Positions 217 through 53,551 of a DNA stretch of 64,000 nt are shown here, in pieces. The DNA is from Macrostomum lignano. Lineage: Eukaryota. The stretch lies in assembly GCA_002269645.1 (NCBI GenBank), contig NIVC01000027.1, positions 124,001 to 188,000 of the forward strand, read 5' to 3'. The notes beneath the pieces are model-generated. The model worked only from the letters and a program-made list of their open reading frames with translations. It was not told where the DNA came from and made no database searches. The translations under genes and the position numbers were made by a program. Every line of letters starts with the position of its first letter. Positions within the stretch are counted from its first letter, which is position 1.

Positions 217-757
<541 letters not shown>

Positions 758-3334: not shown

Positions 3335-3414
3335 TTTAATCCTTTTAGTCAAAAAAAAATCCATCCAAATCTTCATTCTTCAGCTCCAAAGACGCGTCAT
3401 TCGCGCACTGAGTC

Positions 3415-18000: not shown

Positions 18001-19960
18001 AGCACATCAAAGAAACCCGAGATAAGAGACTACGGCGGCACATCTAAGAAACCAGAGGTAAGAGATAAGGAGCGGCACATCAAAGAAACCAGAGATAAGA
18101 CATAAGGAGCGGCACATCAAAGAAACCAGAGATAAGACATAAGGAGCGGCACATCAAAGAAACCAGATATAAGAGACTACGGTGGCACATCAAAGAAACC
18201 ATATAGGTAAGAGATAATGGGAGGCACACCAAAGAAACCAGAGATAAGAGGCTGCGGCTGAACATCAAAGAAACCAAAGATATGGCGGCACATCAAAGAA
18301 ACCAGATATAAGAGACTACGGCGGCACATCAAAGAAACCAGAGATAAGAGACTGCGGCGGCACATCAAAGAAACCCAGAGAAACCCAAAGAAACATTGCT
18401 CACCTCTCCGACTTCGTCCACTGCAAAAGAGGAAGTCTGACAGCAGGCCACGATTCGCACCGGCCTGCCGCTGGCCAGCGAGCCGCCAGCCCGCCTAGGC
18501 GTGGCCTGAGTAGCCGCGGCCGCGCCGCAGCCCACCTGGCCGTAGTTATTCTGGCCCCAGGCGAACACTTCGCCCTGTACGCAGCAACTGTTGCCGTTGC
18601 CACCGCTGGAGCACGAGGCCACCAAAGCCAGTGAGTGATTGCCACCGCAGGCAATCGACAGCACCCGAACACCGTCATCTAGGCCGGCGCAAGGCGCGGG
18701 CGTCAGCAACTGGACGGTGCCACCGTTGCCAAGCTGTCCATAGCCATTGTGACCCCAGCAGTAGAGTCTGCCATCTGCGGTCAGCGCCAGGCAGTGAGGC
18801 CCGGAGCCACAGGCTAAGTCGACTAACACGATGCCGCGAAGGGCTTCGATCTGAATGTAGAGGTAGAGGTTTGCGGAAGGTTACCCGACTGTTAACTGCA
18901 TGGATAAGTCAGAACCAATCAGAACCCATGCTGATTTTCTCTGACCAATCAGAACCTATGCTGATTTTCTCTGACCAATCAGAACCCATGCTGATTTTCT
19001 CTGACCAATCAGAACCCATGCTGATTTTCTCTGACCAATCAGAACCCATGCTGATTTTCTCTGACCAATCAGAACCCATGCTGATTTTCTCTGACCAATT
19101 AGAACCCATGCTGATTTTCTGACCAATCAGAACCCATGCTGACTTTTCCGGACCAATCAGAACCCATGCTGATTTTCTGACCAATCAGAATCCATGCTGA
19201 TTTTCTGACCAATCAGAACCCATGCTGAATTTTCCGGACCAATCAGAACCCATGCTGATTTTCTGACCAATCAGAACCCATGCTGATTTTCTCTGACCAA
19301 TCAGAACCCATGCTGATTTTCTGACCAATCAGAACCCATGCTGATTTTCTGACCAATCAGAACCCATGCTGATTTTCTCTGACCAATCAGAACCCATGCT
19401 GATTTTCTCTGACCAATCAGAACCCATGCTGATTTTCTCTGACCAATCAGAACCCATGCTGATTTTCTCTGACCAATCAGAACCTATGCTGATTTTCTGA
19501 CCAATCAGAACCCATGCTGACTTTTCCGGACCAATCAGAACCCATGCTGATTTTCTGACCAATCAGAACCCATGCTGATTTTCTCTGACCAATCAGAACC
19601 CATGCTGAGATCCGCGTTGACTAATAAAAACGCATGCTGTCTTTTCCCAACCAATCAAATCTTCATAACAAGTCCTGACTAATAGCAGCTGCACCCAATG
19701 AGAACAGTACATACCTCAGTCGGATTCAGACAACTCTGAGCATCTCCCAATCCAAGGCATCCGCTAGAATTGGTGCCAACGCTTAGCACTCGACAATCTG
19801 AGCCCTGCTCTCTGTTAGCAACTAAGATTGCTTCGCTGCCGTTGTTTCCAAACACAACTGCCCAGGAAATCTGATCCCACAGCTCCGGTTCAATCAGGCT
19901 GAACACGCCCCACCTGTCAAGCTGGTGCCTGCGACTTGTGGCAACAATGTGGCTGGCCAT
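15074..19960 (-). CDS. RCBTB1: RCC1 and BTB domain-containing protein (RCBTB1/2 family), 6 exons, ~612 aa
   Basis: Exons 19960-19715, 18850-18404, 17884-17600, 17013-16743, 16508-16060 and 15214-15074, phases consistent. RCC1 repeats (CWGHNGYGQLG, FAWGQNNYGQVG, AWGANSHGQLG), BTB domain (SDVTFRVDGRDIRAHRSLL..RCRHFRSM, YRAFLEYLYSD) and C-terminus AKAGAFKY. Minus-strand AATAAA at 14795-14800. RCBTB1 and RCBTB2 cannot be distinguished. Confidence 0.93.
15278..16035. repeat. 25-bp minisatellite GGGTCAGCATGGGGATTACACAGGT, RCBTB1 intron 5
   Basis: Direct reading. Confidence 0.95.
16553..16690. repeat. ~39-bp degenerate repeat (GGTTGCTATGGAAACTCGATTTTACTGTAGGG..), RCBTB1 intron 4
   Basis: 3-4 imperfect units. 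Confidence 0.75.
17945..18375. repeat. 36-bp repeat GGCGGCACATCAAAGAAACCAGAGATAAGAGACTAC, RCBTB1 intron 2
   Basis: Direct reading. Confidence 0.9.
18910..19608. repeat. 28/30-bp repeat CTGACCAATCAGAACCCATGCTGATTTTCT, RCBTB1 intron 1
   Basis: Direct reading. Every unit contains CCAAT. Confidence 0.95.
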
Positions 19961-20214
19961 GAATTATTAATTAGTTTATTAACTAAATTCAACTTTGTGG
20001 ATTGCTATTAGCGAACATTGAAGCCTGAGTACCCGGGTTTGATTCTGTGCACGATTCACACCTATGTGAGCCAAATGCCTTGGCACAGTGTACATGCCTG
20101 GCGATTGGAGTCAGGACCGCTGTACACCCTGTCTGAGCGCGATAACTATACAGCATGACTGCTTGCCTACTCATTCTACCTATCTATTATGCTACATTAA
20201 GATCTATCCATCCG

Positions 20215-20243
20215 CCAATATCTATCTACCTATCTATCTATCC

Positions 20244-20306
<63 letters not shown>

Positions 20307-20311
20307 CATCC

Positions 20312-20370
<59 letters not shown>

Positions 20371-20474
20371 CATCCATCTATCTATCTACCTATCTATCTA
20401 TCTATCTACCTATCTATCTATCTATCTACCTATCTATCTATCTATCTACCTACATATCTATCTATCTATCTATA

Positions 20475-20512
<38 letters not shown>

Positions 20513-20684
20513 CCTACCTACCTATCTATCTATCTACCTATCTATCTATCTATCTATCTACCTTATCTATCTATCTATCTACCTTATCTATCTATCTACC
20601 TATCTATCTATCTATCTACCTATCTATCTATCTATCTACCTATCTATCTATCTATCTACCTACATATCTATCTATCTATCTATA

Positions 20685-20722
<38 letters not shown>

Positions 20723-21060
20723 CCTACCTACCTATCTATCTATCTACCTATCTATCTATCTATCTACCTTATCTATCTATCTACCTTATCTATCTATCTA
20801 TCTATCTATCCATCTATCTTTGACTCTTTTAATTAGCTTTTTTGCATTTTTGTTGTTATAAAATAAATAATTAAACCCTAAAGAAAGCCTAGTCTAGGCC
20901 GTAATATCGGTTCCAATAAACCTAGTCGAACTGTGTGCGTGAATTTTTCCTTTGTTTTTATATCTATATCTATCTATCTACCTATGTATCTACCTATGTA
21001 TCTACCTATCTATCTTCTATGTATCTATCTATCTATGCATCTATCTACTTATTCACCTAT
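20215..21060. repeat. (TCTA)n microsatellite (main block 20215-20820)
   Basis: Direct reading. Confidence 0.96.
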
Positions 21061-21629
21061 TTACCTAGCAACAATTTGATATTTAAAGACCAAAATTTGA
21101 TCTGCTTCCAGTACCAGTATTTGCTGAGATCCAAAGGCTGTCAAACCAGCAAAATCAAAACTCGACCTATCTCTGCTACGAGTATTTATTAGGACGATGT
21201 TCTTTTAGACGGATTCCCTCAAGTATCAATGGCAAATCCCTTCAGGCAATACTTTGGGCAATTCCGAAAATATGAATTCTAGCTAGATAAATATGTGAAT
21301 AGATAGATAGATATGTACTATGTAAAACTAAGATATGTCCTGAGCGCTGTAACTGTACACATCGGAGTTGCCTTAAATGTTGGCCTTCATGGTCAATAAA
21401 TGACAAATTAGCCATTTAGAATACGTAACGAAAAATGAATACATTAACTTTTATTGTGTTTATTTATCTTTTATGTCAGTGTTTTTGTACTAGGTTGCTA
21501 ATTAAAAGAAAACGAATAGTTTAGCAAATGATTTAGACGCAAAGACAGTTAAACACTTTAGTTAGGTGATAAAAAGAAAGAAAATAGACAGCGGGGGTCG
21601 AAGGAAAGAAAGAGAGGAGAGACATGTGC

Positions 21630-23195
21630 GAGATAGAGAGGGGAGATGAAGAGGGAGATAGAGATGGGGAGATGGAGAGGGAGATAGAGATGGGGAGATG
21701 GAGAGGGAGATAGAGATGGGGAGATGGAAAGGGAGATAGAGATGGGGAGATGGAGAGGGAGATAGAGATGGGGAGATGGGGAGGGAGATAGAGATGGGGA
21801 GATGGGGAGGGAGATAGAGATGGGTAGGAGAGGGAGATAGAGATGGGGAGATGGAGAGGGAGATAGAGATGGGTAGGAGAGGGAGATAGAGATGGGGAGA
21901 TGGAGAGGGAGATAGAGATGGGGAGATGTAGAGGTAGATATAGATGGGGAGATGTAGAGGTAGATAGAGATGGGGAGATGGAGAGGGAGATAGAGATGGG
22001 GAGATGAAGAGGGAGATAGAGATGGGGAGATGTAGAGGTAGATAGAGATGGGGAGATGGAGAGGGAGATAGAGATGGGGAGATGAGAGGGAGATAGAGAT
22101 GGGGAGATGGAGAGGGAGATAAGATGGGGAGATGGAGAGGGAGATAGAGATGGGGAGATGGAAAGGGAGATAGAGAGGGAGATAGAGATGGGGAGATGGA
22201 GAGGGAGATAGAGATGGGTAGGAGAGGGAGATAGAGATGGGTAGGAGAGGGAGATAGAGATGGGGAGATGGAAAGGGAGATAGAGATGGGTAGGAGAGGG
22301 AGATAGAGATGGGGAGATGGAAAGGGAGATAGAGATGGGTAGGAGAGGGAGATAGAGATGGGGAGATGGAAAGGGAGATAGAGATGGGTAGGAGAGGGAG
22401 ATAGAGATGGGTAGGAGAGGGAGATAGAGATGGGTAGGAGAGGGAGATAGAGATGGGGAGATGGAAAGGGAGATAGAGAGGGGAGATAGAGATGGGGAGA
22501 TGGAGAGGGAGATAGAGATGGGTAGGAGAGGGAGATAGAGATGGGTAGGAGAGGGAGATAGAGATGGGGAGATGGAGAGGGAGATAGAGATGGGTAGGAG
22601 AGGGAGATAGAGATGGGGAGATGGAAAGGGAGATAGAGATGGGTAGGAGAGGGAGATAGAGATGGGGAGATGGAAAGGGAGATAGAGATTGGTAGGAGAG
22701 GGAGATAGAGATGGGTAGGAGAGGGAGATAGAGATGGGTAGGAGAGGGAGATAGAGATGGGGAGATGGAAAGGGAGATAGAGATGGGTAGGAGAGGGAGA
22801 TAGAGATGGGGAGATGGAAAGGGAGATAGAGATGGGTAGGAGAGGGAGATAGAGATGGGGAGATGGAAAGGGAGATAGAGATGGGTAGGAGAGGGAGATA
22901 GAGATGGGGAGATGGAAAGGGAGATAGAGATGGGTAGGAGAGGGAGATAGAGATGGGTAGGAGAGGGAGATAGAGATGGGTAGGAGAGGGAGATAGAGAT
23001 GGGGAGATGGAAAGGGAGATAGAGATGGGTAGGAGAGGGAGATAGAGATGGGGAGATGGAAAGGGAGATAGAGATGGGTAGGAGAGGGAGATAGAGATGG
23101 GGAGATGGAAAGGGAGATAGAGATGGGTAGGAGAGGGAGATAGAGATGGGGAGATGGAAAGGGAGATAGAGATGGGTAGGAGAGGGAGATAGATG
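21630..23195. repeat. Purine-rich 23/26-bp repeat (GAGATGGGTAGGAGAGGGAGATA / GAGATGGGGAGATGGAGAGGGAGATA)
   Basis: Direct reading. The + strand has essentially no C. Confidence 0.96.
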
Positions 23196-23800
23196 AAGAG
23201 GCGTGATACAGAGGGAGTCAAAGTATAGGACTATAAAACAGAAAACAATAACGCACTTACTTACTATTTTCAGTCTGTATAATTATATATTCAGCTAATA
23301 AAGTTACAACATTCAATGATTTATTAAGCGCAAAAAACAAACCAACTCCTTGAATAGCGGAGGCCAGGCAGAAAAACACTCATACAAAAATTGCTTTGAA
23401 CATAATTATAGAAAAACAACTTGTCTATTAATAATCTTAAGCAACTATACGCTTGCTTACTAATAGCAATATAAATACTTACAAAATTTATAATAGGCAA
23501 AAACGTTAACAAACAGAACGCATTTTTATCATCTTGTAGCCTTGTACAAAATTTTATATTATCGATTTTAATTAAATACGTTAATTCCGCAGTACTTTAA
23601 AACGTGTTCGCATCGAATAACAAAGCTTCAAGATGCAAGGGAAAGTATTAAATTATTAAATACTAAACTCTATAATCTAAATTTAAACCCTAAACACATT
23701 TTCACTATCGAGCTTAGCCAAGGTCTCAAATTTTTATGCAACTTAATTTATGAATATAAAGTGTGTATTACTGTGAGGTGTTGTGTTAATTTGCTTGGGC

Positions 23801-24189
23801 GGCCCAGCAACTGAGGATCTGGGAGGCTGGCCTAGCAGCTGAGGATCTGGGAGGTTGGCCCAGCAACTGAGGATCTGGGAGGCTGGCCCAGCAGCTGAGG
23901 ATCTGGGAGGCTGGCCCAGCAACTGAGGATCTGGGAGGCTGGCCTAGCAGCTGAGGATCTGGGAGGTTGGCCCAGCAACTGAGGATCTGGGAGGCTGGCC
24001 CAGCAGCTGAGGATCTGGGAGGCTGGCCCAGCAACTGAGGATCTGGGAGGCTGGCCCAGCAACTGACACTCTGGGAGGCTGGCCCAGAAGCTGACACTCT
24101 GGGAGGCTGGCCCAGCAGCTGAGGATCTGGGAGGCTGGCCCAGCAGCTGAGGATCTGGGAGGCTGGCCCAGCAACTGAGGATCTGGGAG
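23801..24189 (-). repeat. 28-bp minisatellite, reverse complement of the 2301-3334 array, ~14 units
   Basis: GGCCCAGCAACTGAGGATCTGGGAGGCT, including the same rare GACACTCT variant. Confidence 0.95.
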
Positions 24190-24392: not shown

Positions 24393-27300
24393 TTAGTTGA
24401 TTCTAATTTTACGATAACTAAGCATGGCCTCTTGCCGCTTCATGTATTTAGCATAGAACTCGTGACCTTCGGGTATGTAGCCACCGTGCTGGCGCAGAGC
24501 GTGCCTGTAGCCTTTCAGGTGCGCCTCCATTAGGTCTTGGGAGGTAACAGCTGTATCGCACACTTCGCACACGAAGCCTTTGCTGCGAACTGCGAATTAA
24601 ACACAGGGAATTAAAATTGGGGCATTAAGAGGGGATTGAATTGGGGAATGAAAGTAAGTTAAGATAAAATTTAATTGTTCGCTTCGCGTCCAAGAGCTGG
24701 TCTACCAATAATTCAAAGACTCAGTTCTAGGATAGTTGGAAGCCGAAAGCTAATCTTGTCCTCAAGCGAACCCTTGCTGTCACTTAGAAGTTTATAACAG
24801 CGAGGGAATTAGGAAGGACATTGACAACCAATTTGAGTAGTTTCAGCCTTAGAATTATCGAAAATTATGACATGTTTCCAATCAAAGACAAATGAGAGAT
24901 AGCGGTAACCATTGAAGGACAGGTGGGAGACAGCCGGCAACCACTGAAGGACAGGTGGGAGACAACGGCAACCACTAAAGGACAAGTGGGAGACAGCGGC
25001 AACCACTGAGGGACAGGTGGGAGACAACGGCAACCACTGAAGGACAGGTGGGAGACAACGGCAACCACTGAAGGACAGGTGGGAGACAGCCGGCAACCAC
25101 TGAAGGACAGGTGGGAGACAACGGCAACCACTAAAGGACAAGTGGGAGACAGCGGCAACCACTGAGGGACAGGTGGGAGACAACGGCAACCACTGAAGGA
25201 CAGGTGGGAGACAACGGCAACCACTGAGGGACACGTGGGAGACAGCGGCAACTACTGAAGGACAGGTGGGAGACAGCGGCAACCACTGAGGGACAGGTGG
25301 GAGACAGCGGCAACCACTGAAGGACAGGTGGGAGACAACGGCAACCACTAAAGGACAAGTGGGAGACAGCGGCAACTACTGAAGGACAGGTGGGAGACAG
25401 CGGCAACCACTGAGGGACAGGTGGGAGACAGCGGCAACCACTGAGGACACGTGGGAGACAGCGGCAACTACTGAAGGACAGGTGGGAGACAGCGGCAACC
25501 ACTGAGGGACACGTGGGAGACAGCGGCAACTACTGAGGGACAGGTGGGAGACAGCGGCAACTACTGAAGGACAGGTGGGAGACAGCGGCAACCACTGAAG
25601 GACAGGTGGGAGACAGCGGCAACCACTGAAGGACAGGTGGGAGACAGCGGCAACCACTGAAGGACAGTTATGAGAGTTGAAAAAGTGAATAAGAATTTCA
25701 ATTCAGATGTTCGCTTCGCGTCCAAGAGCTGGTCTACCAATATTTATAAAGACTCAGTTCTAGGATAGTTGGAAGCCGAAAGCTAATCTTGTCCTCAAGC
25801 GAACCCTTGCTGTCACTTAGGAGTTTATAACAGCGAGGGAATTAGGAAGGACATTGACAATCAGGTTGAGTAGATTAAGCCTTTGAAAAATATGGAAAGT
25901 TATGACACGACTCCAATTAAGGCTTACACTGAAACAAGCCTTGATACAGTATTATACAGTATTACAGCCTTGATTCAGTACTATACTGAAACAATAGTAC
26001 ATCACTAGTAGTAGCAGGTAACATTCCAACATTGTGTATGTTTGCTTCGCGTCCAAGAACTGGCCTACTGATCGCACATCAAGATCCAGTTCTAGGATAG
26101 TTGGAAGCCTAAATCTAATTTTGTCCTCAAGCGAACCCTTGCTGTCAATTGGAGTTCCCATAGCAGCAAGGGAATTAGGAAGGACTGAGGTTCCTGCATG
26201 CACTCCTGTCAAAGTCCAAGACCTATATGTGGGAAACTACATAAAACTGACAAACAGGAAGACCGTTACCCTCCACTGACACTGATACAGATTGGAATAA
26301 TTACCCTCCACTGACACTGATACAGATTGGAATAATTACCCTCCACTGACACTAATACAGATTGGAATAATTACCCTCCACTGACACTGATATAGATTGG
26401 AATAATTACCCTCCACTGACAGCGATACAGATTGGAATAATTACCCTCCACTGACACCGATATAGATTGGAATAATTACCCTCCACTGACACCGATACAG
26501 ATTGGAATAATTACCCTATATAAACTAATAATTAAACTTTCTTTTGTAGTTAGACTACAAGTATTTCCTTTAACTAAAGAGCTCAGAGCAAGAAGTTAAA
26601 ATTAAATCAAGATATGTCAATGTTCGCTTCGCGTCCAAGAGCTGGTCTACCATTCAATCATAAAGACTCAGTTCTAGGATAGTTGGAAGCCTAAAGCCAA
26701 TCTTGTCCTCAAGCGAACCCTTGCTGTCACTTAGGAGTTTATAACAGCGAGGGAATTAGGAAGGACATTGACAACCAAATTGAGTAGTTTTAGCCTTAGA
26801 ATTATTATTAAAAGTGATGACACGTTTCCAATAGAGGACAGGTGGGAGACAGCCGGCAACCACTGAAGGACAGGTGGGAGACAGCCGGCAACCACTGTAG
26901 GACAGGTGGGAGACAGCCGGCAACTACTGAAGGACAGGTGGGAGACAGCCGGCAACTACTGAAGGACAGGTGGGAGACAGCCGGCAACTACTGAAGGACA
27001 GGTGGGAGACAGCCGGCAACCACTGAAGGACAGGTGGGAGACAGCCGGCAACCACTGAAGGACAGGTGGGAGACAGCCGGCAACCACTGAAGGACAGGTG
27101 GGAGACAGCCGGCAACTACTGAAGGACAGGTGGGAGACAGCCGGCAACCACTGAAGGACAGGTGGGAGACAGCGGCAACCACTGAAGGACAGGTGGGAGA
27201 CAACGGCAACCACTGAAGGACAGGTGGGAGACAGCCGGCAACTACTGAAGGACAGGTGGGAGACAGCCGGCAACCACTGAAGGACAGGTGGGAGACAGCC

Positions 27301-30300
27301 GGCAACCACTGAAGGACAGGTGGGAGACAGCCGGCAACCACTGAAGGACAGGTGGGAGACAACGGCAACTACTGAAGGACAGGTGGGAGAGTTTAAAAAA
27401 TTAATAAGAATTTCAATTCAGATGTTCGCTTCGCGTCCAAGAGCTGGTCTACCAATATTTATAAAGACTCAGTTCGAGGATAGTTGGAAGCCGAAAGCTA
27501 ATCTTGTCCTCAAGCGAACCCTTGCTGTCACTTAGAGATTATACTAACAGCAAGGGAGTTAGGAAGGACGAACGCTCTGATGTACATATTTTAAATACAT
27601 AAACAATGTTTGCTCCGCGTCCAAGAGCTGGTCTACCAATGAGTCATTAGACTCAGTTCTAGGATAGTTGGAAGCCTTTAAACTAATAATCTTGTCCTCA
27701 AGCGAACCCTTGCTGTCAATTAAAAAAGAGTTTTATAAACAGCAATGGAATTAGGAAGGACAGGATGAAGAAAGCAGTGTCGGTAATTATTCGAATCTAT
27801 AACGACATTAAATTACCTTTTTTGAATTGTAATTTTAATGTTGTTTCCCCAAAGCTCCGGGAATTGTTGAGGAGCTGAGGCCAACAACTGCAAATACAGA
27901 ATATTATTAGATAGATATATATATAAGAAATTATGCTAAATAAGTTCAATGCACTGCACCACTCACTCTGGTCGCGTTGAAGCTTTTGAAAGGCCATCCG
28001 GTGAGCTTTAGAATTGAAATGCAACTCGGCCTCTTTGAACGCGTCGAAATCTGCATTGCAAACTGAGCAACGCATTTGGTATTGTTTGAGCAGTTTTTTA
28101 ATCAATTGTTCTTTAGTTAGGCTGCTCAGATATTGCTCTATTGACTGCACAGTGACTGCCTGTTGCTGGGTGCCATTCTGGGCATCAGCTGTAGCAGCAG
28201 TTTCGTCAGCAGCCGATGATGATGAGGCTTCAGTGGCACCGCCGGGAGGCTGCAGTGAGGATAGGAGAAATTTATGATCGGTAGTTCAACTGAACAGCCG
28301 TACGCAGCCTTCAGACGCGCCGCGCAATAGCTGGTTTGTTTAATTTTGATCAATACCTGATGTCTGACAGGTCACACCTGATGTCTGACAAGTCACACCT
28401 GATGTCTGACAGGTCACACCTGATGTCTGACAAGTCACACCTGCATACCTGACAGGTCATACCTGATATCTGACAGGTCACACCTGCATATCTGACAGGT
28501 CATACCTGCATGTCTGACAGGTCACACCTGCATATCTGACGGGTCACACCTGATGTCTGACAGGTCACATCTGCATATCTGACAGGTCACACCTGATGTC
28601 TGACAGGTCACATCTGCATATCTGACAGGTCACACCTGCATATCTGACAGGTCACACCTGATGTCTGACAGGTCACATCTGCATATCTGACAGGTCACAC
28701 CTGATGTCTGACAGGTCACATCTGCATATCTGACAGGTCACACCTGCATATCTGACAGGTCACACCTGCATATCTGACAAGTCACACCTGCATATCTGAC
28801 AAGTCACACCTGACATCTGACAGGTGTCACCGCTGCATACATGACAGGTCACCTGATATCTGACAGGTCGTACCTGACATCTGACAAGTCACACCTGCAT
28901 ATCTGACAGGTCGTACCTGACATCTGACAAGTCACACCTGACATCTGACAAGTCACACCTGCATATCTGACAGGTCACACCTGACATCTGACAAGTCACA
29001 CCTGGATATCTGACAGGTCACACCTGATATCCGTCAGGTCACACCTGATATCTGACAGGTCACACCTGATATCTGATAAGTCACATCTACATATCTGATA
29101 AATCAAAACACAAAATCTAAAAAATAATACCGTAAAGTTAACAATAAACTAGAGCTAGATAGCTATTTACACGGTAATAAAAGTCTGCACTCACCTTATC
29201 CTTATCCGCGGCACTCTCCGCTGGGTCCAATCGATAGATGCCAGGTGGTAGAGCAGACTTTCCAGTTGGCGATTTCTTAGCACCGCTGCCGCCTCGGTTG
29301 AGCGCCCCAGCAGCAGCTTTGCGATGCTTGACCCCGGCCCGATGCGATTTCATGAGCTCCGGGTGCAGTGTTAAATTGCAAATGTCGCAGTACACTTCCG
29401 GGTCTTTCGCTTCGCTTAGTTCGCGGAATTTCTTCTCCTTTTCCTTCTTGAGGTGCCTGGCAAGCGAAAATACATAAGCAATTGAAAGTTCCATTTAAAA
29501 CAAGAAGAGTAGGGGCTGAAAAATGTAGCAGGACCAACTGAAGTACATGAAGGAATCTAGCAGGACCAACTGAAGTACCTGAAGGAATCTAGCAGGACCA
29601 ACTGAAGTACATGAAGTAATCAAGCAGGACCAACTGAAGTACCTGAAGGAATCAAGCAGGACCAACTGAAGTACCTGAAGGAATCAAGCAGGACCAACTG
29701 AAGTGACTAAAGGAATCAAGCAGGACCAACTGAAGTACCTGAAGGAATCAAGCAGGACCAACTGAAGTACCTGAAGGAATCTAGCAGGACCAACTGAAGT
29801 ACCTGAAGGAATCAAGCAGGACCAACTGAAGTACCTGAAGGAATCAAGCAGGACCAACTGAAGTGACTGAAGGAATCTAGCAGGACCAACTGAAGTACCT
29901 GAAGTAATCAAGCAGGACCAACTGAAGTACCTGAAGGAATCTAGCAGGACCAACTGAAGTACCTGAAGGAATCTAGCAGGACCAACTGAAGTACCTGAAG
30001 GAATCTAGCAGGACCAACTGAAGTACATGAAGGAATCTAGCAGGACCAACTGAAGTACCTGAAGGAATCTAGCAGGACCAACTGAAGTACATGAAGGAAT
30101 CTAGCAGGACCAACTGAAGTACATGAAGGAATCAAGCAGCACCAATTGAAGTACCTGAAGGAATCAAGCAGCACCAACTGAAGTACATGAAGGAATCAAG
30201 CAGGACCAACTGAAGTGACTGAAGGAATCTAGCAGGACCAACTGAAGTACCTGAAGGAATCTAGCAGGACCAACTGAAGTACCTGAAAGAATCTAGCAGG

Positions 30301-30909
30301 ACCAACTGAAGTACATGAAAGAATCAAGCAGGACCAACTGAAGTACATGAAGGAATCTAGCAGGACCAACTGAAGTACATGAAAGAATCTAGCAGGACCA
30401 ACTGAAGTACATGAAGGAATCTAGCAGGACCAACTGAAGTACATGAAGGAATCTAGCAGGACCAACTGAAGGACCAATGGAAGAGCAGCGTCAAGGGTAC
30501 TATGTACTTTTAAACTACAAGACCCGCATACTGACGGTTGCATTGCAGACAAAATTCAAACGTACTTGGAACCCTCTCTGTGCAATTTAAACATCGCCTC
30601 GCCAGTGCATTTCGCGTCGCACAATTCGCAGTGAAACTGCTGCACAGGCGGCCGCTGCGGTGCAACAACAACGCTACTATTGTTCCTACCCAGACCGTTG
30701 TTAAATTTTCGTTTAAACTGCGGCTGTTGCTGTCGATATGGCTGCAGCATGTGGGGTGGCGGCGGCCCGCCGCGGTACTGCCGTTTAGCAGAAAGCTGCT
30801 GACCCTGCTGCTGAAGCATGAGATCGGACACACTCTGCAGGTTTGTCTCGGGCCCGCTTGGTTTGTTATAGAAGCCGCAATAGGCACTTGATGGCACTGT
30901 CACTTCCAT
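24393..30909 (-). CDS. Matrin/U1-type (JAZ/ZNF346/ZNF385-like) C2H2 zinc-finger protein, 4 fingers, 4 exons, ~361 aa; snoRNA host gene
   Basis: Exons 30909-30566, 29456-29195, 28249-27967 and 24589-24393 with consistent phases (2, 0, 1). Fingers: CELC..LHREGSKH, CDIC..SHRAGVKH, CSVC..LHFNSKAH and CEVC..AHLKGYRH. The start ATG is inferred, 13 nt after an acceptor AG. Confidence 0.82.
24673..24820 (-). ncRNA. Box H/ACA snoRNA-like, copy 1 (most 3')
   Basis: Hairpin GUCCU..AGGAC with an internal pocket, H box AGAUUA, second hairpin GCUUC..GAAGC, and ACA at + strand 24676-24678. Each box lies 14 nt below its upper stem. Intronic and sense to the host. Confidence 0.82.
24915..25667. repeat. 31/32-bp minisatellite GAAGGACAGGTGGGAGACAGCGGCAACCACT between snoRNA copies 1 and 2
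   Basis: Direct reading. Confidence 0.95.
25705..25853 (-). ncRNA. Box H/ACA snoRNA-like, copy 2
   Basis: Same architecture. H box AGAUUA, ACA at 25708-25710. Confidence 0.82.
26036..26186 (-). ncRNA. Box H/ACA snoRNA-like, copy 3 (divergent loops)
   Basis: H box AAAUUA (still ANANNA), ACA at 26039-26041. Guide pockets are unchanged while the apical loops differ. Confidence 0.78.
26266..26517. repeat. 35-bp repeat TTACCCTCCACTGACACTGATACAGATTGGAATAA between snoRNA copies 3 and 4
   Basis: About 7 units. Confidence 0.93.
26618..26767 (-). ncRNA. Box H/ACA snoRNA-like, copy 4 (H box variant AGAUUG)
   Basis: Same architecture, ACA at 26621-26623. The last base of the H box is degenerate. Confidence 0.7.
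26837..27390. repeat. 31/32-bp minisatellite (same family as 24915-25667) between snoRNA copies 4 and 5
   Basis: Direct reading. Confidence 0.95.
27420..27570 (-). ncRNA. Box H/ACA snoRNA-like, copy 5
   Basis: H box AGAUUA, ACA at 27423-27425. One substitution in the hairpin-1 5' guide (CUAAC). Confidence 0.76.
27604..27762 (-). ncRNA. Box H/ACA snoRNA-like, copy 6 (most 5')
   Basis: H box AGAUUA, ACA at 27607-27609. Lower stem GCUUC/GGAGC is kept by a G-U pair. Loops are divergent. Confidence 0.78.
28357..29100. repeat. 21-bp repeat CACCTGATGTCTGACAGGTCA, zinc-finger gene intron 2
   Basis: Direct reading. Confidence 0.94.
29527..30470. repeat. 32-bp repeat GCAGGACCAACTGAAGTACCTGAAGGAATCTA, zinc-finger gene intron 1
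   Basis: Direct reading. Confidence 0.96.
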
Positions 30910-30975: not shown

Positions 30976-31403
30976 ATCAGTAGATAATCCCTAAATTCAG
31001 CAGATATCCATAAATCAGTAGATAATCCCTAAATTCAGTAGATATCCCTAAAATCAGTAGATATCCCTAAAATCAGTAGATATCCCTAAAATCAGTAGAT
31101 ACCCCTAAAATCAGTAGATATCCCTAAAATCAGTGGATATCCCTAAAATCAGTAGTTATCCCTAAAATCAGTGGATATCCCTAAAATCAGTAGTTATCCC
31201 TAAAATCAGTAGATATCCCTAAAATCAGTAGATATCCCTAAAATCAGTAGATATCCCTAAAATCAGTAGATACCCCTAAAATCAGTAGATATCCCTAAAA
31301 TCAGTGGATATCCCTAAAATCAGTAGTTATCCCTAAAATCAGTGGATATCCCTAAAATCAGTAGTTATCCCTAAAATCAGTAGATATCCCTAAAATCAGT
31401 AGT
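30976..31403. repeat. 19-bp repeat GATATCCCTAAAATCAGTA upstream of the zinc-finger start
   Basis: Direct reading. Confidence 0.95.
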
Positions 31404-33547: not shown

Positions 33548-36246
33548 TCACACATGGCCAATCACTGGCGGCAGTGTCAGCCCCCGTTCAGCCAGCAGGG
33601 CAACATTATTAAGCTTTGGCGGCGCTGTTCTGGTGTGCCAGACAAGAATTCTGCTGCAATCGTTGGCCCGAGCTTCCAGGTCAGACTGACGGACGCCCAG
33701 GCTGGTTAACAGCAGGCTCTCCTGTTGATGCGTTGAAACGGCGTAATTCTTTTAATTACATTACTATTAAGAATCTGCGCATGGTAGATATACCAAATTA
33801 GGTAGATATACCTAAAACCACAAACCAGTAGATATCCCAAATCAGCAGATATCCCAAACCATTAGATATCCCAAACCAGTAGATAACTTAAATCAGTAGA
33901 TATCCCAAATCAGCAGATATCCCAAATCAGCAGATATCCCAAATCAGCAGATATCCCAAATCAGTAGATATCCCAAACCTGCAGATATCCCAAATCAGTA
34001 GATATCCCAAACCTGCAGATATCCCAAATCAGTAGATATCCCAAACCTGCAAATATCCCAAATCAGTAGATATCCCAAATCAGCAGATATCCAATTATAC
34101 AATTTCAAATGGATACTCAAATGACTAGAGCTAGCTAATGCGAGCAAATCCGATACCTGAAATCCTCTTTCAACCTTGTAGGCCAGTTTGGCTGCCGGTC
34201 GCTCATGCAGCAGCTGCAAATTGATGGCGAAACCGGCCATGTCCAGGGGAAACTGGCGGTGCGGCTTGAACGCGACAATCCAACCCTGTTTTTGAGGTGG
34301 CGGAGTTTTTAATGCCAGTTCTTTGTGTACTTTTCAAATGCATTTGTGAGTACGTCATGCCTGTGGAAGTGTCTTAGCCTAATGGCTGTGAAAGTGTGGT
34401 AGCCTAATGGCTGTGGGAGTGTGGTAGCCTAATGGCTGTGAAAGTGTGGTAGCCTAATGGCTGTGGGAGTGTGGTAGCCTAATGGCTGTGGAAGTGTGGT
34501 AGCCTAACGGCTGTGGGAGTGTGATAGCCTAATAGCTGTGAGAGTGTGGTAGCCTAATAGCTGTGAGAGTGTGGTAGCCTAATGACTATTCTGGTAGCCT
34601 AATGACTATTCTTGTAGCCTAATGACTATTCTGGTAGCCTAATGACTATTCTTGTAGCCTAATGACTATTCTGGTAGCCTAATGACTATTCTTGTAGCCT
34701 AATGACTATTCTGGTAGCTTAATGACTATTCTGGTACCCTAATGACTATTCTGGTAGCCTAATGACTATTCCGGTAGCCTAATGACTATTTTTGTAGCCT
34801 AATGACTATTCTTGTAGCCTAATGACTATTCTGGTAGCCTAATGACTATTCTGGTAGAGTAAGAGCTAGCTATTTTGTAGCTAAATAATATGAAAAATGA
34901 TGCCTTAAAGAACAAAATGTACTTTTAATAACGCAATAAACCAACGCCTGCTTACTAGTACTCGACCATGAGCACAGCGAATTCCCTCGTACAGCAGGCC
35001 GCCAGCAAAGGCTACAGGCCATACCGATACTCGCCGAGTAGCCCTAATCTCGTCAAACAATCGCACATCATAGGTATTGTCATCGTCAGCTATGTACATA
35101 ACGCCAGTTCTAGACGGATCGTTGCGTAACCATTCGAAAGCCAAATTGCGCTGTCTGACACCCTCCGGCCGCCACCAATAGGGCTCAGTTGACTTGAGCT
35201 TCTCATCCTCTGGTGTGGCCACGTATAGATGAGTATAAGAAAGCACACCGCAGTTCCCAATGGTGTCGGCAACCAGAGACGATGGAGAATCGGCGTCTTC
35301 TACAACTAGCCAGTGAATTGCAGGCACTCTGGCGAGGGTGTTGCAGAGTCTAGTGAGTTCAGCTCGCTGCTCAGGTCGCCTAGAGTTAAGGTTGAGACAT
35401 TGTTGCGTAACTAAGGCAGAAGTCCGTAGGGAAACGCTCAAATTTTTTTACCAGTGTACACTTGGCAACGTGTTAAAGCTTCCACCCCGAAACGGGGGTT
35501 TCATAACTCCGAAAAGCAGCTTGTTTTCATATCTCCGACACTTCATAACTCCGACAATTCATGTCTCCAACCAACTTAACCCTAACGGAGAAATGAAGTC
35601 TCGAAGATATGGTGTCAGAACTGTGAGATTCTGCTGAACTGAAGTGTCAGAGATATGAAATTTCGGATATATAGGCCCCCACTAACACTAATTTAACCAA
35701 TCAAAGCCACGCCCGTAGTTTTCGTCTCAAATAGGGATGATGCAATTTGCGTCACAAGGAGGCCCTAGCATAGGTTGGTGAGGAGAGAGTGAGAAGTAAT
35801 GGCTAGCGTTGTATTAAAGCTACCAGTCTCAATTCTCAGTCCTTATAATCTGGTTTCGGGTGGAAACTATAACATGTTGCTGAGAGTGCAATCGATGCAT
35901 TGTTCGAACGGATAATAAATGTGCAAAAGCAGTCATGTGATGAAATTTGTACTTGGGGTAAATTTACATTGTTGCTATTATTGTGTTTAGGCTAAAGTCC
36001 AACTGTGTTATAACCTTACTTGTAAGTAGCTGTCACAACATAGATAGTTGGTAAGATATTCCCATTGGAGGCAGCCCTAGAATCCAACTGACAAATCCAA
36101 ATACCGAATGTTAGTCCAAGCACAAATGCACAAATCAATGGCAGCAGGACTGCTAGTCGACAATATTGATGAGTTCGCCAAAAATACTGCCATACAATGC
36201 GTTTAAATGATTTTCTGTCTCCAATGCACCGACTGTTAGGTGGCAT
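33548..36246 (-). CDS. B3GAT3: Galactosylgalactosylxylosylprotein 3-beta-glucuronosyltransferase (GT43, B3GAT family), 4 exons
   Basis: Exons 36246-36020, 35379-34956, 34285-34157 and 33721-33548. N-terminal TM segment, then LPTIYVVTATY, HWLVVED, QRNLA, YIADDDNTY (DxD), VSVWPV, FPLDMAGFAIN, ES.LL and ILVWHTRT. The paralogue identity within B3GAT1-3 is uncertain. Confidence 0.92.
33826..34092. repeat. 17-bp repeat GATATCCCAAATCAGYA, B3GAT intron 3
   Basis: Direct reading. Confidence 0.92.
34370..34858. repeat. 25-bp then 20-bp arrays sharing GGTAGCCTAATG, B3GAT intron 2
   Basis: Direct reading. Confidence 0.92.
35494..35680. mobile_element. Small fold-back (MITE-like) element in B3GAT intron 1
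   Basis: 19/20 inverted repeat at 35526-35545 and 35640-35659, GGGG..TCCGAA / TTCGGA..CCCC ends, and a central TAACCCTAAC. No TSD seen. Confidence 0.45.
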
Positions 36247-37394
36247 GATTGCCACATTGAGGTGTAGCAGATAAGCATATATGCAGCAGATCAAGGCATA
36301 AAATATGGGTTTAACAAGACACTTTCTTAACAAATCAGTGCTATGATTAGTCAATTTATAACTACTTATTTAATGATTTAAAATAATAAAATAAGAAACT
36401 GATTTCTATATAATTCTAGATTATTCCTGGTTTTAGATTCTATGAATAATAGACTAATAAGTACTTAAGCCAAGACAACATGCAAAAAATCTAAACAAAT
36501 TAGGCCTAATCATTTCAAATTGTCTTAATGATGTAACCACGCTCTGGTCGCGGGATAGGGCAGGGGAACTTTTTCGAAAGTGCCTCCTATCGCCGTGCAC
36601 CCCCTGCACAGAGCTGTTGAGACTCGGCCGGTCTTCGACCAGGCCTGGAGACTCCCGCTCTGCTGCAACCCCCCTGCTGCCTTGGCTCCGTCTCCCCTGC
36701 CGCCACACTTGCCTTTCCGGAGCTCCCCCTCCCTCTTTGTACCCTCCCCCTCTACCTTATCTCCCCTGCGCGCCTCCCTATTCTCTATGCACTCTTCCTG
36801 TCTCCCCTCTTTTTTTGCCCCTTTTCGCCCTATTTTCCTGCGCTGTCCTCCCTTTCTCTGCGTCTACTTACAGTATTCTGTGCGCTCACCGTCACCCCAT
36901 TCCTTCTCAAACTCTCAAATGGTGACGCAAGTCGTGTGAACCCTTCTTCCCCTCGATGACTCATCGATGACTCACCCCCCTCTCTTGCGCAACCTTTTCT
37001 CACGCCATTGTTCTCCCCCCCAAATTTCTCATGCGACACCCACCCCACCTCCGCTTCTATTGTTCTCGTTTTTTATTCTTTTGTTCTCTTTACCCCCACC
37101 AATTATCACATTTTCTCCGATTTTCTCTTTCTATTGTTCTCGTTTTCGCATCTAATCACCTTTTCCCCAATGTTTGCTTTTCTATTGTTCTCGATTCTCC
37201 CCAATTATCCCCGATTTCCAATTCCTTTGTTCTCGACCCCAGCCCCATTGTTCTCAATGTTTGCTTGCGCAACACTTTCGCGACCACCCGCTGCGCCAAT
37301 TATCCCCCCACCCCACCTCCGGATTGCGCAATTTCCCTTTTTCTCATGTTGCTATGCCGGTCTCATGCTTCTCATCATGACTCATTCTGCCAGC

Positions 37395-39346: not shown

Positions 39347-40232
39347 TAGGGATTCCAAAATCCCGACATTTTACAATCCCGGGATTGAATAGTCCCGAAA
39401 TCCCGATGCTGTTGAAATCCCGGGATTCAAAATCCCGGAATCCCAGTGCTTTTGCAATCCCGGGATTAAAAATCCCGGGATTCGATTCCCAAAAAAAATC
39501 CCGGGATTCAAATCCCGGATTTTTGGCCCCAATCCCGAAATTGCTAGACGGACTGTGCGGCGTGCCGCGTGCAGTAGTCATGGTCTCGCGACTCTCAGAG
39601 TCTCAGGGCCTTTTCATATTACCAATTCCAGAACCAGAATCGGTTCGGAATTCGAAGAAAAACAGCAGTATAACTATTAAACTCTGTTAATATTTGACTG
39701 CCTTAACAGCCTCACTTTGCACGATTTTTCACTTTCTTCTTGGCGACTGTCATTCAATAATAAAAACTTTATAGCACGTATCTCCCTCTAGTTATGGAGA
39801 CAAAAAGTTTATACTTCACAAATTGGTTCTTGTTCTGGAACCAGAGCAAGCAATATGAAAAGGCCCTCAGTCTCGTCTTGTGGTAGAAAACGAAAAAAAG
39901 TTAAAATTATCTATCATTTACAGTTCACATTAACAATTTTTAGCTCAATTAGGACAGGAGCTTTGCAAATGTTTAACGTTTTATTGAGAAACAGCAAAAA
40001 CAAATAAATGTTTTATTATTCAAATAAACGTTTAGACTTTAAATTATCTAATTTAGGCATTGAAAGGTCGTTCTAATCCCGGACCAATCCCAGGATTAAG
40101 GCCTTGAAATCCCGGGATCCCGATCCTGGTCTTTTGCAATCCCGGGATTAAAAATCCCGGGATTCGATTCCCAAAAAAATCCCGGGATTCAAATCCCGGA
40201 TTTTTGGCCCCAATCCCGGGCCCCAATCCCTA
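39347..40232. mobile_element. Non-autonomous hAT-type MITE, 886 bp, rich in AATCCCGGGATT palindromes
   Basis: Ends TAGGGATT...AATCCCTA. 8-bp TSD ATCTCAAT at 39339-39346 and 40233-40240. A ~100-bp subterminal block occurs twice in direct orientation (~39436-39536 and ~40131-40218). Confidence 0.85.
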
Positions 40233-52769: not shown

Positions 52770-53490
52770 CTTGGCTATCGAGTGCAGTAATTCTTGGTTT
52801 GCCAAGTGCAGTAAGTAATCCTTGGTTTATTAATAGCAATAATCCATGGCTTATGAGTGCAGTAATCCTTGGTTTATTAATAGCAATAATCCTTGGCTTA
52901 TCGAGTGCAGTAATCCTTGGTTTATTAATAGCAATAATCCTTGGCTTATCGAGTGCAGTAATCCTTGGTTTATTAATAGCAATAATCCATGCCTTATCGA
53001 GTGCAGTAATCCTTGGTTTATTAATAGCAATAATCCTTGGCTTATCGAGTGCAGTAATCCTTGGTTTATTAATAGCAATAATCCATGGCTTATCGAGTGC
53101 AGTAATTCATGGTTTATTAATAGCAATAATCCTTGGTTTATCGAGTGCAGTAATCCTTGGTTTATTAATAGCAATAATCCTTGGCTTATCGAGTGCAGTA
53201 ATCCTTGGTTTATTATAGCAATAATCCTTGGCTTATCGAGTGCAGTAATCCTTGGTTTATTAATAGCAATAATCCATGGCTTATCGAGTGCAGTAATTCA
53301 TGGTTTATTAATAGCAATAATCCTTGGCTTATCGAGTGCAGTAATCCTTGGTTTATTAATAGCAATAATCCTTGGCTTATCGAGTGCAGTAATCCTTGGT
53401 TTATTAATAGCAATAATCCTTGGCTTATCGAGTGCAGTATTCCTTGGTTTGCCAAGAGCAATAATCCTTAGCTTATCGAGTGCAGTAATC
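52770..53490. repeat. 48-bp (2x24 dimeric) array TCGAGTGCAGTAATCCTTGGTTTATTAATAGCAATAATCCTTGGCTTA in E1 (~15 units)
   Basis: Direct reading. Confidence 0.95.
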
Positions 53491-53551
53491 TAAGTGTTTT
53501 TATTTAGTCCTTTAATAAAAGCTTTTAATAAAAAATTTTACACTACTACTT

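What the first reader, a model, noticed from the sequence alone, without database searches (positions are those of the whole stretch)
24673..27762. Six paralogous box H/ACA snoRNAs packed into a single intron
Seen: six ~150-nt copies lie between the donor at 27966 and the acceptor at 24590 of the zinc-finger gene. These flanking exons join in phase, so no intervening exon is needed, and copies 5 and 6 are only ~35 nt apart. On the host-sense (-) strand each copy folds as hairpin-hinge-hairpin-tail. All six have ACA after the second stem, five have an ANANNA H box, and each box lies 14 nt below its upper stem. The pocket strands (UUCGCUU, CAACUAUCCU, UGGACGC) are invariant while apical loops and spacers diverge freely, which suggests purifying selection. 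Established: H/ACA architecture and the 14-16 nt rule; vertebrate intronic snoRNAs are normally one per intron, and multi-copy intronic H/ACA clusters are known mainly from Drosophila and plants. Inference: this is a polycistronic intronic snoRNA cluster that needs endonucleolytic separation, hosted by a putative dsRNA-binding zinc-finger gene.
Basis: partly seen in the sequence, partly recalled or inferred. Interest (0 to 1): 0.85.

Follow-up and report, generated by a model that had tools for sequence, protein, structure and literature searches.

The report
Six H/ACA snoRNA genes in one intron
The last intron of a zinc-finger gene of the flatworm Macrostomum lignano carries six tandem copies of a pseudouridylation-guide (box H/ACA) small nucleolar RNA related to human SNORA52 and fly Psi28S-1192; this layout is already known from flies and rice, so it is a new example and not a new kind of system.

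Summary
Six 148-159-nt copies lie on the minus strand between 24673 and 27762, all inside one intron (27966..24590) of a four-exon gene. My gene model is 100% identical to the NCBI Macrostomum lignano protein BOX15_Mlig017401g1. Each copy folds as hairpin-hinge-hairpin-tail with an H box (AGAUUA), an ACA, and box-to-upper-stem distances of 14 and 15 nt.

Rfam gives only sub-threshold hits, all on the minus strand, to SNORA52 (30-32 bits) and Drosophila snopsi28S-1192 (19-30 bits). The 5' pocket matches both consensuses and pairs 7+5 bp around one U of a conserved 28S site (AAGCGAA-U-G-AUUAG). The 3' pocket target is unresolved.

Two further M. lignano loci carry the same six copies in the same intron, so the assembly holds at least 18 genes. 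Only the minisatellite spacers change length between loci.

Old divergence between copies spares the pockets (2/33 variable columns) and hits loops and hinge (27/33). Recent divergence between loci shows no such bias.

Expression, co-transcription and endonucleolytic separation could not be tested. Intronic clusters of H/ACA snoRNAs are known in Drosophila and intronic snoRNA clusters in rice, so this is a new member of a known kind, first noted in a flatworm. Interest is modest.

The parts
27604..27762 (-). snoRNA copy c1 (159 nt), the most divergent copy (76-81% identical to the others). Its second-hairpin lower stem is only 5 bp.
   Evidence: (nhmmer E = 1e-45)
27420..27570 (-). snoRNA copy c2 (151 nt). 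It lies 33 nt downstream of c1 and carries two private pocket substitutions (CCUAACU; CCUC next to the upper stem).
26618..26767 (-). snoRNA copy c3 (150 nt). Its H box is AGAUUG in this window and AGAUUA in the two paralogous loci.
26036..26186 (-). snoRNA copy c4 (151 nt), a divergent copy with H box AAAUUA. A C-to-U change turns the AxC mismatch in the second upper stem into an A-U pair. It is identical in all three loci.
25705..25853 (-). snoRNA copy c5 (149 nt), used as the reference copy. Elements: lower stem 25853-25847 / 25796-25790; 5' pocket strands CCUAAUU 25846-25840 and UUCGCUU 25803-25797; H box AGAUUA 25789-25784; 3' pocket strands CAACUAUCCUA 25771-25761 and UUGGACGC 25725-25718; ACA 25710-25708.
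24673..24820 (-). snoRNA copy c6 (148 nt). ACA is at 24678-24676, and the predicted 3' end lies about 83 nt upstream of the 3' splice site.
24590..27966 (-). Last intron (3,377 nt) of the zinc-finger host gene, with the GT donor at 27966-27965 and the AG acceptor at 24591-24590. It contains all six copies.
27967..28249 (-). Host gene exon 3, which encodes ...CSVCNADFDAFKEAELHFNSKAHRMAFQKLQRDQ.
24393..24589 (-). Host gene exon 4 coding part, ending at stop codon TAA 24395-24393. It encodes IRSKGFVCEVCDTAV...YRKIRIN.
29195..29456 (-). Host gene exon 2.
30566..30909 (-). Host gene exon 1 coding part, from ATG 30909-30907.
24896..25667 (.). 31-nt minisatellite (24.9 units) that forms the c5-c6 spacer. 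The length of this spacer differs between the three loci.
26835..27390 (.). 32-nt minisatellite (17.5 units) that forms the c2-c3 spacer. It is homologous to the 31-nt array. The block c3+array+c2 (26621-27569) is about 92% identical to the block c6+array+c5 (24676-25852).
26266..26517 (.). 35-nt minisatellite (7.2 units) in the c3-c4 spacer.

Best explanation
The six elements are genes for one box H/ACA pseudouridylation-guide snoRNA of Macrostomum lignano. It is a distant relative of human SNORA52 and Drosophila Psi28S-1192. Tandem and segmental duplication amplified it inside the last intron of a JAZ-type zinc-finger gene.

Shown:
- the H/ACA anatomy;
- the sense orientation of all copies within a single annotated intron;
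- a 5' pocket identical to the SNORA52 and psi28S-1192 consensus, which pairs 7+5 bp around one U of the conserved large-subunit rRNA sequence AAGCGAA-U-G-AUUAG, 14 nt from the H box;
- the same six-copy array in three loci of the assembly.

Inferred:
- The array is transcribed as part of the host pre-mRNA.
- Each copy is bound co-transcriptionally by the dyskerin/NHP2/NOP10/NAF1-GAR1 proteins.
- After splicing and debranching, exonucleases trim from the intron ends. The internal copies need at least one endonucleolytic cut per spacer, as with RNase III cleavage of yeast and plant polycistronic snoRNAs.
- The mature ~150-nt RNPs then convert the 28S uridine to pseudouridine.
- The 3' hairpin is probably also a guide, because its pocket strands are invariant in 17 of 18 copies. 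The best candidate target is the conserved 28S site CCC-U-CAGGAUAGC, 42-51 nt (mode 45) upstream of the first target in almost all rDNA contigs.
- With at least 18 redundant copies, individual copies now appear to drift almost neutrally.
For: - Six copies, all on the minus strand and none elsewhere in the window.
- Hairpin-hinge-hairpin-ACA folds with z-scores of -2.9 to -4.1.
- Rfam matches on the minus strand only. SNORA52 scores 30-32 bits (E = 2.6e-5 for one copy). snopsi28S-1192 aligns over its full length at 19-30 bits (E = 7e-4). Both show the same pocket strands, UCCUAAU / UUCGCUU.
- AAGCGAATGATTAGAGG occurs in more than 120 metagenomic rDNA contigs. A register-constrained scan returns this site with 12 Watson-Crick pairs. 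In L028 the site lies inside LSU_rRNA_eukarya.
- The host gene model equals NCBI protein P0001, and the exon junction is shared with P0002.
- The paralogous loci L122 and L123 each hold six copies in the same order and in the same intron.
- Variable columns between copies: pockets 2/33, loops plus hinge 27/33, Fisher p = 1e-10.
- An AxC mismatch in the second upper stem is repaired independently to A-U (c4) and to G-C (L123 c2).
- Precedent for this arrangement in rice, Drosophila and Plasmodium (PMC2780460, PMC5932544, PMC2656528).
Against: - No RNA-level evidence of any kind was obtainable.
- No Rfam family reaches its gathering score.
- Fold energy is no better on the minus strand than on the plus strand.
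- Compensatory covariation is essentially absent.
- Recent substitutions fall in pockets and stems as often as in loops. Several copies carry potentially damaging changes: window c2 in both pockets, L123 c1 with UUCGCUU changed to UCCGCUU, and L122 c2 in the lower stem.
- The 3' pocket pairs only imperfectly with generic rRNA: 7 contiguous pairs plus 3 on one arm and 3 plus 2 on the other at the 28S candidate. A rival 18S site scores similarly.
- The M. lignano rRNA itself was not available, so even the first target is inferred from its conservation in other eukaryotes.
Confidence: 0.8

Rival explanations
1. The copies are real snoRNA genes, but unannotated non-coding or alternative exons lie between them. 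Each splicing event would then release one snoRNA per intron, as in snoRNA host genes of the UHG/GAS5 type, and no endonuclease would be needed.
For: A 73-nt segment bounded by AG and GT exists at 27888-27816. The minisatellite spacers contain many CAG and GT motifs. Alternative splicing of snoRNA-cluster hosts is documented in Neurospora (PMC2780460).
Against: The annotated protein in three loci joins exons 3 and 4 directly. The 73-nt segment lies upstream of c1, not between copies, and has an in-frame stop. c1 and c2 are only 33 nt apart, which leaves no room for an exon with its splice signals. Spacer lengths vary freely between loci.
Confidence: 0.1
2. The copies are independently transcribed snoRNA genes, each with its own promoter, that happen to lie inside an intron. 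This is the case for many nematode and plant snoRNAs.
For: snoRNA promoters in flatworms are uncharacterised, so none can be recognised or excluded by sequence. c3, c5 and c6 share about 75 nt of upstream flank.
Against: The upstream flanks of c1, c2 and c4 share nothing with one another or with those of c3, c5 and c6. The upstream region of c2 is the 3' end of c1 plus 33 nt. All 18 copies are in the host-sense orientation. The shared flank of c3, c5 and c6 is explained by the segmental duplication.
Confidence: 0.07
3. The elements are decaying duplicates, that is, snoRNA-derived repeats carried along by minisatellite-driven expansion in an extremely repeat-rich genome. Few or none would still be functional.
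For: Recent substitutions are spread evenly over functional and non-functional positions. snoRNA bodies are not clearly more conserved than unique spacers between loci. Some copies carry damaging changes. Minisatellites fill every intron of the gene.
Against: Copies that differ by 20-25% overall still keep the pockets, boxes and stems. c4 and c5 are identical in all three loci. The six-copy layout is kept in three loci while the spacers change length. The 5' guide remains perfectly complementary to the conserved rRNA site in 15 of 18 copies.
Confidence: 0.05

Closest known systems
[quoted passage not shown] 2004 J Mol Biol 341:669; Huang et al. 2005 RNA 11:1303; cited in PMC5932544 and PMC2780460)
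   Same: Several H/ACA snoRNAs lie in one intron of a protein-coding host gene, in the sense orientation. The arrangement departs from the vertebrate and yeast rule of one snoRNA per intron. That the fly clusters often consist of sequence isoforms of one guide is from my own knowledge; the primary papers were not held.
   Different: The organism is a flatworm (Platyhelminthes, Macrostomorpha) and the host gene is different. Three of the five spacers are 31-35-nt minisatellite arrays whose length varies between loci. Expression and processing are not shown here, whereas the fly clusters were validated experimentally (my knowledge of those papers; the full text was not held).
Rfam RF00542 snopsi28S-1192 (Drosophila H/ACA snoRNA)
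   Same: The alignment is end to end (model positions 1-138) on the minus strand for all six copies. The 5' pocket strands are the same (UCUAAUUC / UCGCUU). The H box AGAUUA is at the same place. UAUCC(U) is shared in the 5' strand of the second pocket.
   Different: Scores are 19-30 bits against a gathering score of 44. The 3' strand of the second pocket differs (UUGGACGC here, GAGAAAC in the fly consensus). The apical parts do not align.
Rfam RF00419 SNORA52 (vertebrate ACA52)
   Same: The first hairpin matches almost base for base in the lower stem and both pocket strands (GUCC-UCCUAAU...UUCGCUUG-GGAC). The H box is at the same distance.
   Different: Only the first hairpin matches; the model's 62-nt second hairpin is skipped. 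Scores are 30-32 bits against a gathering score of 71. The human gene is a single copy in an intron of RPLP2 (my own knowledge, not checked here).
Polycistronic and intronic snoRNA clusters of plants (rice), yeast polycistronic snoRNAs cut by RNase III/Rnt1p and trimmed by Rat1p, and two snoRNAs in one Plasmodium intron (PMC2780460 and its reference B48; PMC2656528)
   Same: Several snoRNAs lie on one precursor, so endonucleolytic cuts in the spacers followed by exonucleolytic trimming are logically required.
   Different: Those clusters are mostly box C/D or mixed and hold different snoRNAs, not six paralogues of one guide. No RNase III-type stem was identified in the spacers here.

Membership tests
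Box H/ACA snoRNA (class) | Hairpin-hinge-hairpin-tail secondary structure of about 130-160 nt | tested here: met
   Folds of c2-c6 have z-scores of -2.9 to -4.1. c1 forms the first hairpin, but its second is not the minimum-energy fold. 92.6% of cells are paired in the hand-drawn structure over 14 distinct sequences, against 33-48% when partners are slid.
Box H/ACA snoRNA (class) | H box (ANANNA) in the hinge and ACA after the second hairpin | tested here: met
   The hinge has AGAUUA or AAAUUA in 5/6 window copies and AGAUUG in c3 (AGAUUA in both paralogous c3 copies). ACA is present in 6/6 window copies and in all 12 copies of the paralogous loci. Whether the mature 3' end lies 3 nt after ACA cannot be read from DNA.
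Box H/ACA snoRNA (class) | An internal pocket with bipartite complementarity to a target RNA, placing an unpaired U 14-16 nt upstream of the H or ACA box | tested here: met
   First hairpin: 7+5 Watson-Crick pairs flank the U of AAGCGAA-U-G-AUUAG in eukaryotic LSU rRNA, 14 nt from the H box. Second hairpin: the distance is 15 nt, but the target is inconclusive. The M. lignano rRNA itself was not available.
Box H/ACA snoRNA (class) | Stable RNA bound by dyskerin, NHP2, NOP10 and GAR1; target uridine actually pseudouridylated | not testable with these tools
   No RNA-seq, immunoprecipitation or modification data are accessible here.
Rfam RF00419 SNORA52 | Covariance-model score at or above the gathering score (71 bits) | tested here: not met
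   29.9-32.1 bits, and only the first hairpin aligns.
Rfam RF00542 snopsi28S-1192 | Covariance-model score at or above the gathering score (44 bits) | tested here: not met
   19.3-30.4 bits, with full-length alignment.
Rfam RF00419 / RF00542 (guide function) | Same guide sequence in the first pocket, and hence the same rRNA target | tested here: met
   The pocket strands CCUAAU(U) and UUCGCUU are shared with both family consensuses.
Intronic snoRNA gene cluster (rice/Drosophila type) | Two or more snoRNA genes within a single intron, in the same orientation as the host gene, with no exon between them | tested here: met
   All six copies lie between the donor at 27966 and the acceptor at 24590. 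The annotated proteins at three loci join the flanking exons directly. Non-coding alternative exons cannot be excluded without transcript data.
Intronic snoRNA gene cluster (rice/Drosophila type) | Copies released from the host pre-mRNA or intron, not from promoters of their own | not testable with these tools
   This rests only on indirect arguments: the 33-nt c1-c2 spacer, unrelated upstream flanks, and uniform orientation.

The most novel reading that the evidence does not exclude
Amplified intronic arrays of a single H/ACA guide, at least 18 copies over three loci, could be a regular mode of snoRNA gene organisation in flatworms. In this reading the minisatellite spacers are not passive filler. 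They would act as structured, length-variable processing spacers; each 31-32-nt unit can form a small CCACCUG/CAGUGG hairpin that could offer endonuclease entry sites. If so, polycistronic intronic processing would extend to Spiralia and would link minisatellite dynamics to snoRNA dosage.
Probability: 0.1. Interest if true: 0.45.

Novelty: new member of a known kind. Interest (0 to 1): 0.3.

Why it matters
Flatworm snoRNAs are almost unannotated. A homology survey of Schistosoma found no unambiguous homologue of any known snoRNA except U3 (PMC2770079), and I found no paper on M. lignano snoRNAs.

This locus supplies a flatworm H/ACA snoRNA whose first guide can be traced to human SNORA52 and fly Psi28S-1192. 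That supports an old, conserved pseudouridine in domain II/III of the large-subunit rRNA.

It also extends the 'several snoRNAs in one intron' arrangement from insects and plants to a spiralian. M. lignano is a transgenic, regenerating model animal, so the endonucleolytic processing step could be studied there.

The biology is otherwise conventional. The value lies mainly in annotation and in seeding a covariance model for flatworm genomes.

Tried and rejected
1. Rfam at gathering thresholds found nothing in the window. Only E-value mode gave leads.
2. Fold energy as a strand test failed, because the plus strand folds as well or better. Strand assignment therefore rests on the boxes, the rRNA complementarity, the Rfam hits and the host orientation.
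3. Covariation tests on 6 and on 14 sequences have almost no power.
4. A register-free duplex-energy target scan (RNA.duplexfold) was rejected. It ranked the SNORA52-type target of the first hairpin only 8th, so it does not discriminate. The register-constrained pair count was used instead.
5. The second-hairpin target stayed unresolved. The 28S site CCC-U-CAGGAUAGC (the C after AGGAUAG is invariant in 120 rDNA contigs) and the 18S site UUAA-U-AGGGAUAGUUGG both fit imperfectly. A perfect GCGUCCA left arm occurs only in variable regions of unrelated organisms.
6. I considered fetching M. lignano rDNA through a spurious rDNA-encoded ORF. I dropped this as too unlikely to succeed for the cost of a full protein search.
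7. Look-ups of the UniRef-only paralogues P0002 and P0004 found no contigs.
8. Literature searches for the exact residue numbers guided by SNORA52 and Psi28S-1192 led nowhere. Huang et al. 2005 is not held.
9. A CAB box (UGAG), which would make this a Cajal-body scaRNA, was rejected. UGAG lies in a stem, not a loop, and is absent from c4.
10. A transposon or SINE origin was rejected. The copies are confined to one intron in one orientation, with no poly(A) tails or target-site duplications, and the flank homology is explained by a local segmental duplication.

Full report
WHAT IS THERE

Reading the minus strand of 24400-28100 shows six similar ~150-nt elements separated by tandem repeats. MAFFT alignments and an nhmmer profile scan of the whole 64-kb window find exactly six copies. 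All are on the minus strand, and there are no further or fragmentary copies.

Measured from the first base of the first stem to three bases after ACA, the copies are:
- c1 27762-27604
- c2 27570-27420
- c3 26767-26618
- c4 26186-26036
- c5 25853-25705
- c6 24820-24673

The outer limits equal those of the finding. Three spacers are minisatellites: 31-nt units at 24896-25667, 35-nt units at 26266-26517 and 32-nt units at 26835-27390. The c1-c2 spacer is 33 nt and the c4-c5 spacer about 180 nt of unique sequence.

A self-comparison shows that the block c6-array-c5 (24676-25852) is about 92% identical to the block c3-array-c2 (26621-27569). Part of the array therefore arose by duplication of a two-copy segment. 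c1 and c4 are the old, divergent members, 76-82% identical to the rest.

ORGANISM AND HOST GENE

I assembled a four-exon model on the minus strand:
- exon 1: 30909-30566
- exon 2: 29456-29195
- exon 3: 28249-27967
- exon 4: 24589-24393

The donor GT starts at 27966 and the acceptor AG ends at 24590. The exons join in phase 1.

The 361-aa product is 100% identical over its full length to NCBI protein PAA93455.1, 'hypothetical protein BOX15_Mlig017401g1' of Macrostomum lignano. The window lies in contig NIVC01000027.1 of assembly GCA_002269645.1. The junction ...QKLQRDQ|IRSKGFVCEVC... is also present in UniRef paralogue P0002.

Pfam finds zf-met (39.9 bits) and zf-C2H2_jaz (31.3 bits), both above their cut-offs. 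All six copies lie in the last intron in the sense orientation.

A 73-nt segment at 27888-27816 is bounded by AG and GT. It lies upstream of c1 and has an in-frame stop. I found nothing to indicate an exon between the copies, but only transcript data could exclude non-coding exons.

ARE THEY H/ACA snoRNAs?

Structure. Each copy folds as hairpin-hinge-hairpin-tail. For c2-c6 the minimum-energy fold is that structure, with z-scores of -2.9 to -4.1. c1 forms the first hairpin, but its second hairpin has only a 5-bp lower stem and is not the minimum-energy fold.

Anatomy of c5, read from the sequence:
- lower stem UGUCCUU/GAGGACA
- pocket strands CCUAAUU and UUCGCUU
- a 12-13-bp upper stem
- H box AGAUUA, 14 nt below the upper stem
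- second lower stem UCG(G)CUUC/GAAGCGA
- pocket strands CAACUAUCCUA and UUGGACGC
- a 10-bp upper stem
- ACA, 15 nt below it

Boxes. ANANNA holds for AGAUUA or AAAUUA in five copies. This is a private change of this locus, because c3 reads AGAUUA in both paralogous loci.

Rfam. Nothing reaches a gathering score. In E-value mode every copy, on the minus strand only, matches SNORA52 (29.9-32.1 bits, gathering score 71) and Drosophila snopsi28S-1192 (19.3-30.4 bits, gathering score 44). For a single copy the E-values are 2.6e-5 and 7e-4. The SNORA52 match covers only the first hairpin but is almost base for base in the lower stem and both pocket strands. The fly model aligns end to end, with the same first pocket and the H box in register.

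Limits. Fold energy does not favour the minus strand. Covariation is nearly absent. The one informative pair is an AxC mismatch in the second upper stem, which became A-U in c4 and G-C in L123 c2. Strand and class assignment therefore rest on the boxes, the distances, the family matches, the rRNA complementarity and the host orientation.

TARGETS

First pocket. By the H/ACA rules it predicts the target 5'-AAGCGAA-U-N-AUUAG-3'. A register-constrained scan returns that site with 7+5 Watson-Crick pairs. In the complete rDNA unit L028 the site lies inside LSU_rRNA_eukarya.

The first hairpin is therefore a guide for a conserved uridine of the large-subunit rRNA. It is the same guide as in SNORA52 and Psi28S-1192. 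The fly family name points to 28S position 1192, but I could not verify residue numbers in the literature.

Second pocket. It fits generic rRNA only imperfectly.
- 28S candidate CCC-U-C-AGGAUAGCUGG. It lies 42-51 nt (mode 45) upstream of the first target in almost all rDNA contigs (two at 56, one at 64). It gives 7 contiguous pairs plus 3 on one arm and 3 plus 2 on the other. The fly consensus second pocket (UAUCCU / GAGAAAC) fits the same site by my reading, which is a lead only.
- 18S candidate UUAA-U-A-GGGAUAGUUGG. It pairs 10-11 nt on one arm but weakly on the other, and this sequence is present in only some eukaryotes.

The second pocket strands are invariant in 17 of 18 copies, which argues that the second hairpin is functional.

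PARALOGOUS LOCI

The 90% cluster of the host protein holds two more NCBI M. lignano proteins. Their loci are L122 (NIVC01001310.1, gene 16.1 kb) and L123 (NIVC01003258.1, gene 7.2 kb). Both have the same upstream glycosyltransferase-43 neighbour.

Each locus holds six copies in the same order and intron. Start-to-start spacings are:
- window: 192/801/582/332/1033
- L122: 191/722/722/333/414
- L123: 192/651/655/332/1128

Only the minisatellite-bearing spacers change. The assembly thus has at least 18 genes for this snoRNA.

SELECTION

Between copies within the window (old divergence), variable columns number 2/33 in pockets, 2/9 in boxes, 20/82 in stems and 27/33 in loops plus hinge. Comparing pockets plus boxes with loops plus hinge gives Fisher p = 1e-10. 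This mosaic at a 10-20-nt scale is what constraint on a guide RNA predicts. Duplication boundaries or gene conversion do not explain it.

Between the three loci (recent divergence of about 2%) there is no such signal:
- snoRNA bodies are variable at 17/931 sites and unique spacers at 30/909.
- By class the figures are pockets 2.0%, stems 1.9%, loops 2.7% and flanks 2.2%.
- Several copies carry changes in pockets or stems: window c2, L122 c1, L123 c1 and L122 c2.
- c4 and c5 are identical in all three loci.

This is as expected with 18-fold redundancy.

MECHANISM

The anatomy, the location, the first target and the conservation of the array are shown. The following steps are inferred from established H/ACA biology and from the geometry:
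- The copies are made from the host pre-mRNA.
- The H/ACA proteins assemble on each copy and protect it.
- Exonucleases trimming a debranched intron can free only the outermost ends, so the spacers need endonucleolytic cuts. This is the case for yeast polycistronic snoRNAs cut by RNase III and trimmed by Rat1p (reference B48 in PMC2780460).

The 33-nt c1-c2 spacer, the unrelated upstream flanks of c1, c2 and c4, and the uniform orientation all argue against individual promoters.

COMPARISON AND NOVELTY

[quoted passage not shown] Huang et al. [quoted passage not shown] Plasmodium has two snoRNAs in one intron (PMC2656528). The arrangement is thus a known kind.

What is new is the phylum and the particular gene. 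No paper on M. lignano snoRNAs was found. The Schistosoma survey detected no homologue of known snoRNAs other than U3 (PMC2770079).

VERDICT

I rate it a new member of a known kind, with interest about 0.3.

Noticed in passing
window 218-678, 2264-3497, 9646-10224, 12274-13888, 20088-20861, 21533-23221, 23801-24189, 28355-29098, 29522-30475, 31020-31400, 52799-53493, 59432-61413: The window is saturated with minisatellites of 21-49-nt units. They fill every intron of the zinc-finger gene and much of the intergenic DNA, and they produce long spurious ORFs in several frames.
   Followed up: partly
L122 3001-19121, L123 3001-10155, window 24393-30909: Three copies of the same host gene in the assembly encode proteins in one 90%-identity cluster (>=90% identical) but span 16.1, 7.2 and 6.5 kb. 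Within the snoRNA intron the differences are changes in minisatellite length. The other introns of L122 were not inspected.
   Followed up: partly
window 24896-25667 and 26835-27390 compared with the snoRNA 5' ends (e.g. 25853-25846): The 31/32-nt minisatellite unit (..CCCACCUGUCCUUCAGUGGUUGCC..) shares the octamer UGUCCUUC with the first 8 nt of the snoRNA. The unit can also form a small CCACCUG/CAGUGG hairpin. My rough estimate of the chance of such an 8-mer match is about 0.07, so this may be coincidence.
   Followed up: no
window 27816-27888 (minus strand): A 73-nt segment between the donor and c1 is bounded by a polypyrimidine tract plus AG and by GTAAT. In the phase set by exon 3 it has an in-frame stop. 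It could be a cryptic or poison exon, or nothing at all.
   Followed up: no
window 47680-49329 and 49419-50051 (+): A long ORF of 549 aa matches the Pfam TNP-like RNase H N-terminal domain (P-element/THAP9-type transposase, E = 3e-7). A 210-aa ORF follows it. This is probably a DNA transposon remnant.
   Followed up: partly
window 4303-4920 (+), 10739-13888 (-), 16018-18829 (-), 34905-36354 (-): Neighbouring gene fragments are: a Nop-domain protein (PRPF31-like by my reading), an ankyrin-repeat protein, an RCC1+BTB protein and a glycosyltransferase-43 (B3GAT-like) gene. The glycosyltransferase also neighbours the host gene in L122 and L123, so the paralogous loci are syntenic.
   Followed up: partly
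window 40139-40255 (-): A sub-threshold Rfam match to the bacterial Pseudomon-1/ErsA sRNA (31 bits, gathering score 50, E = 0.04). This is almost certainly chance in a eukaryotic contig.
   Followed up: no
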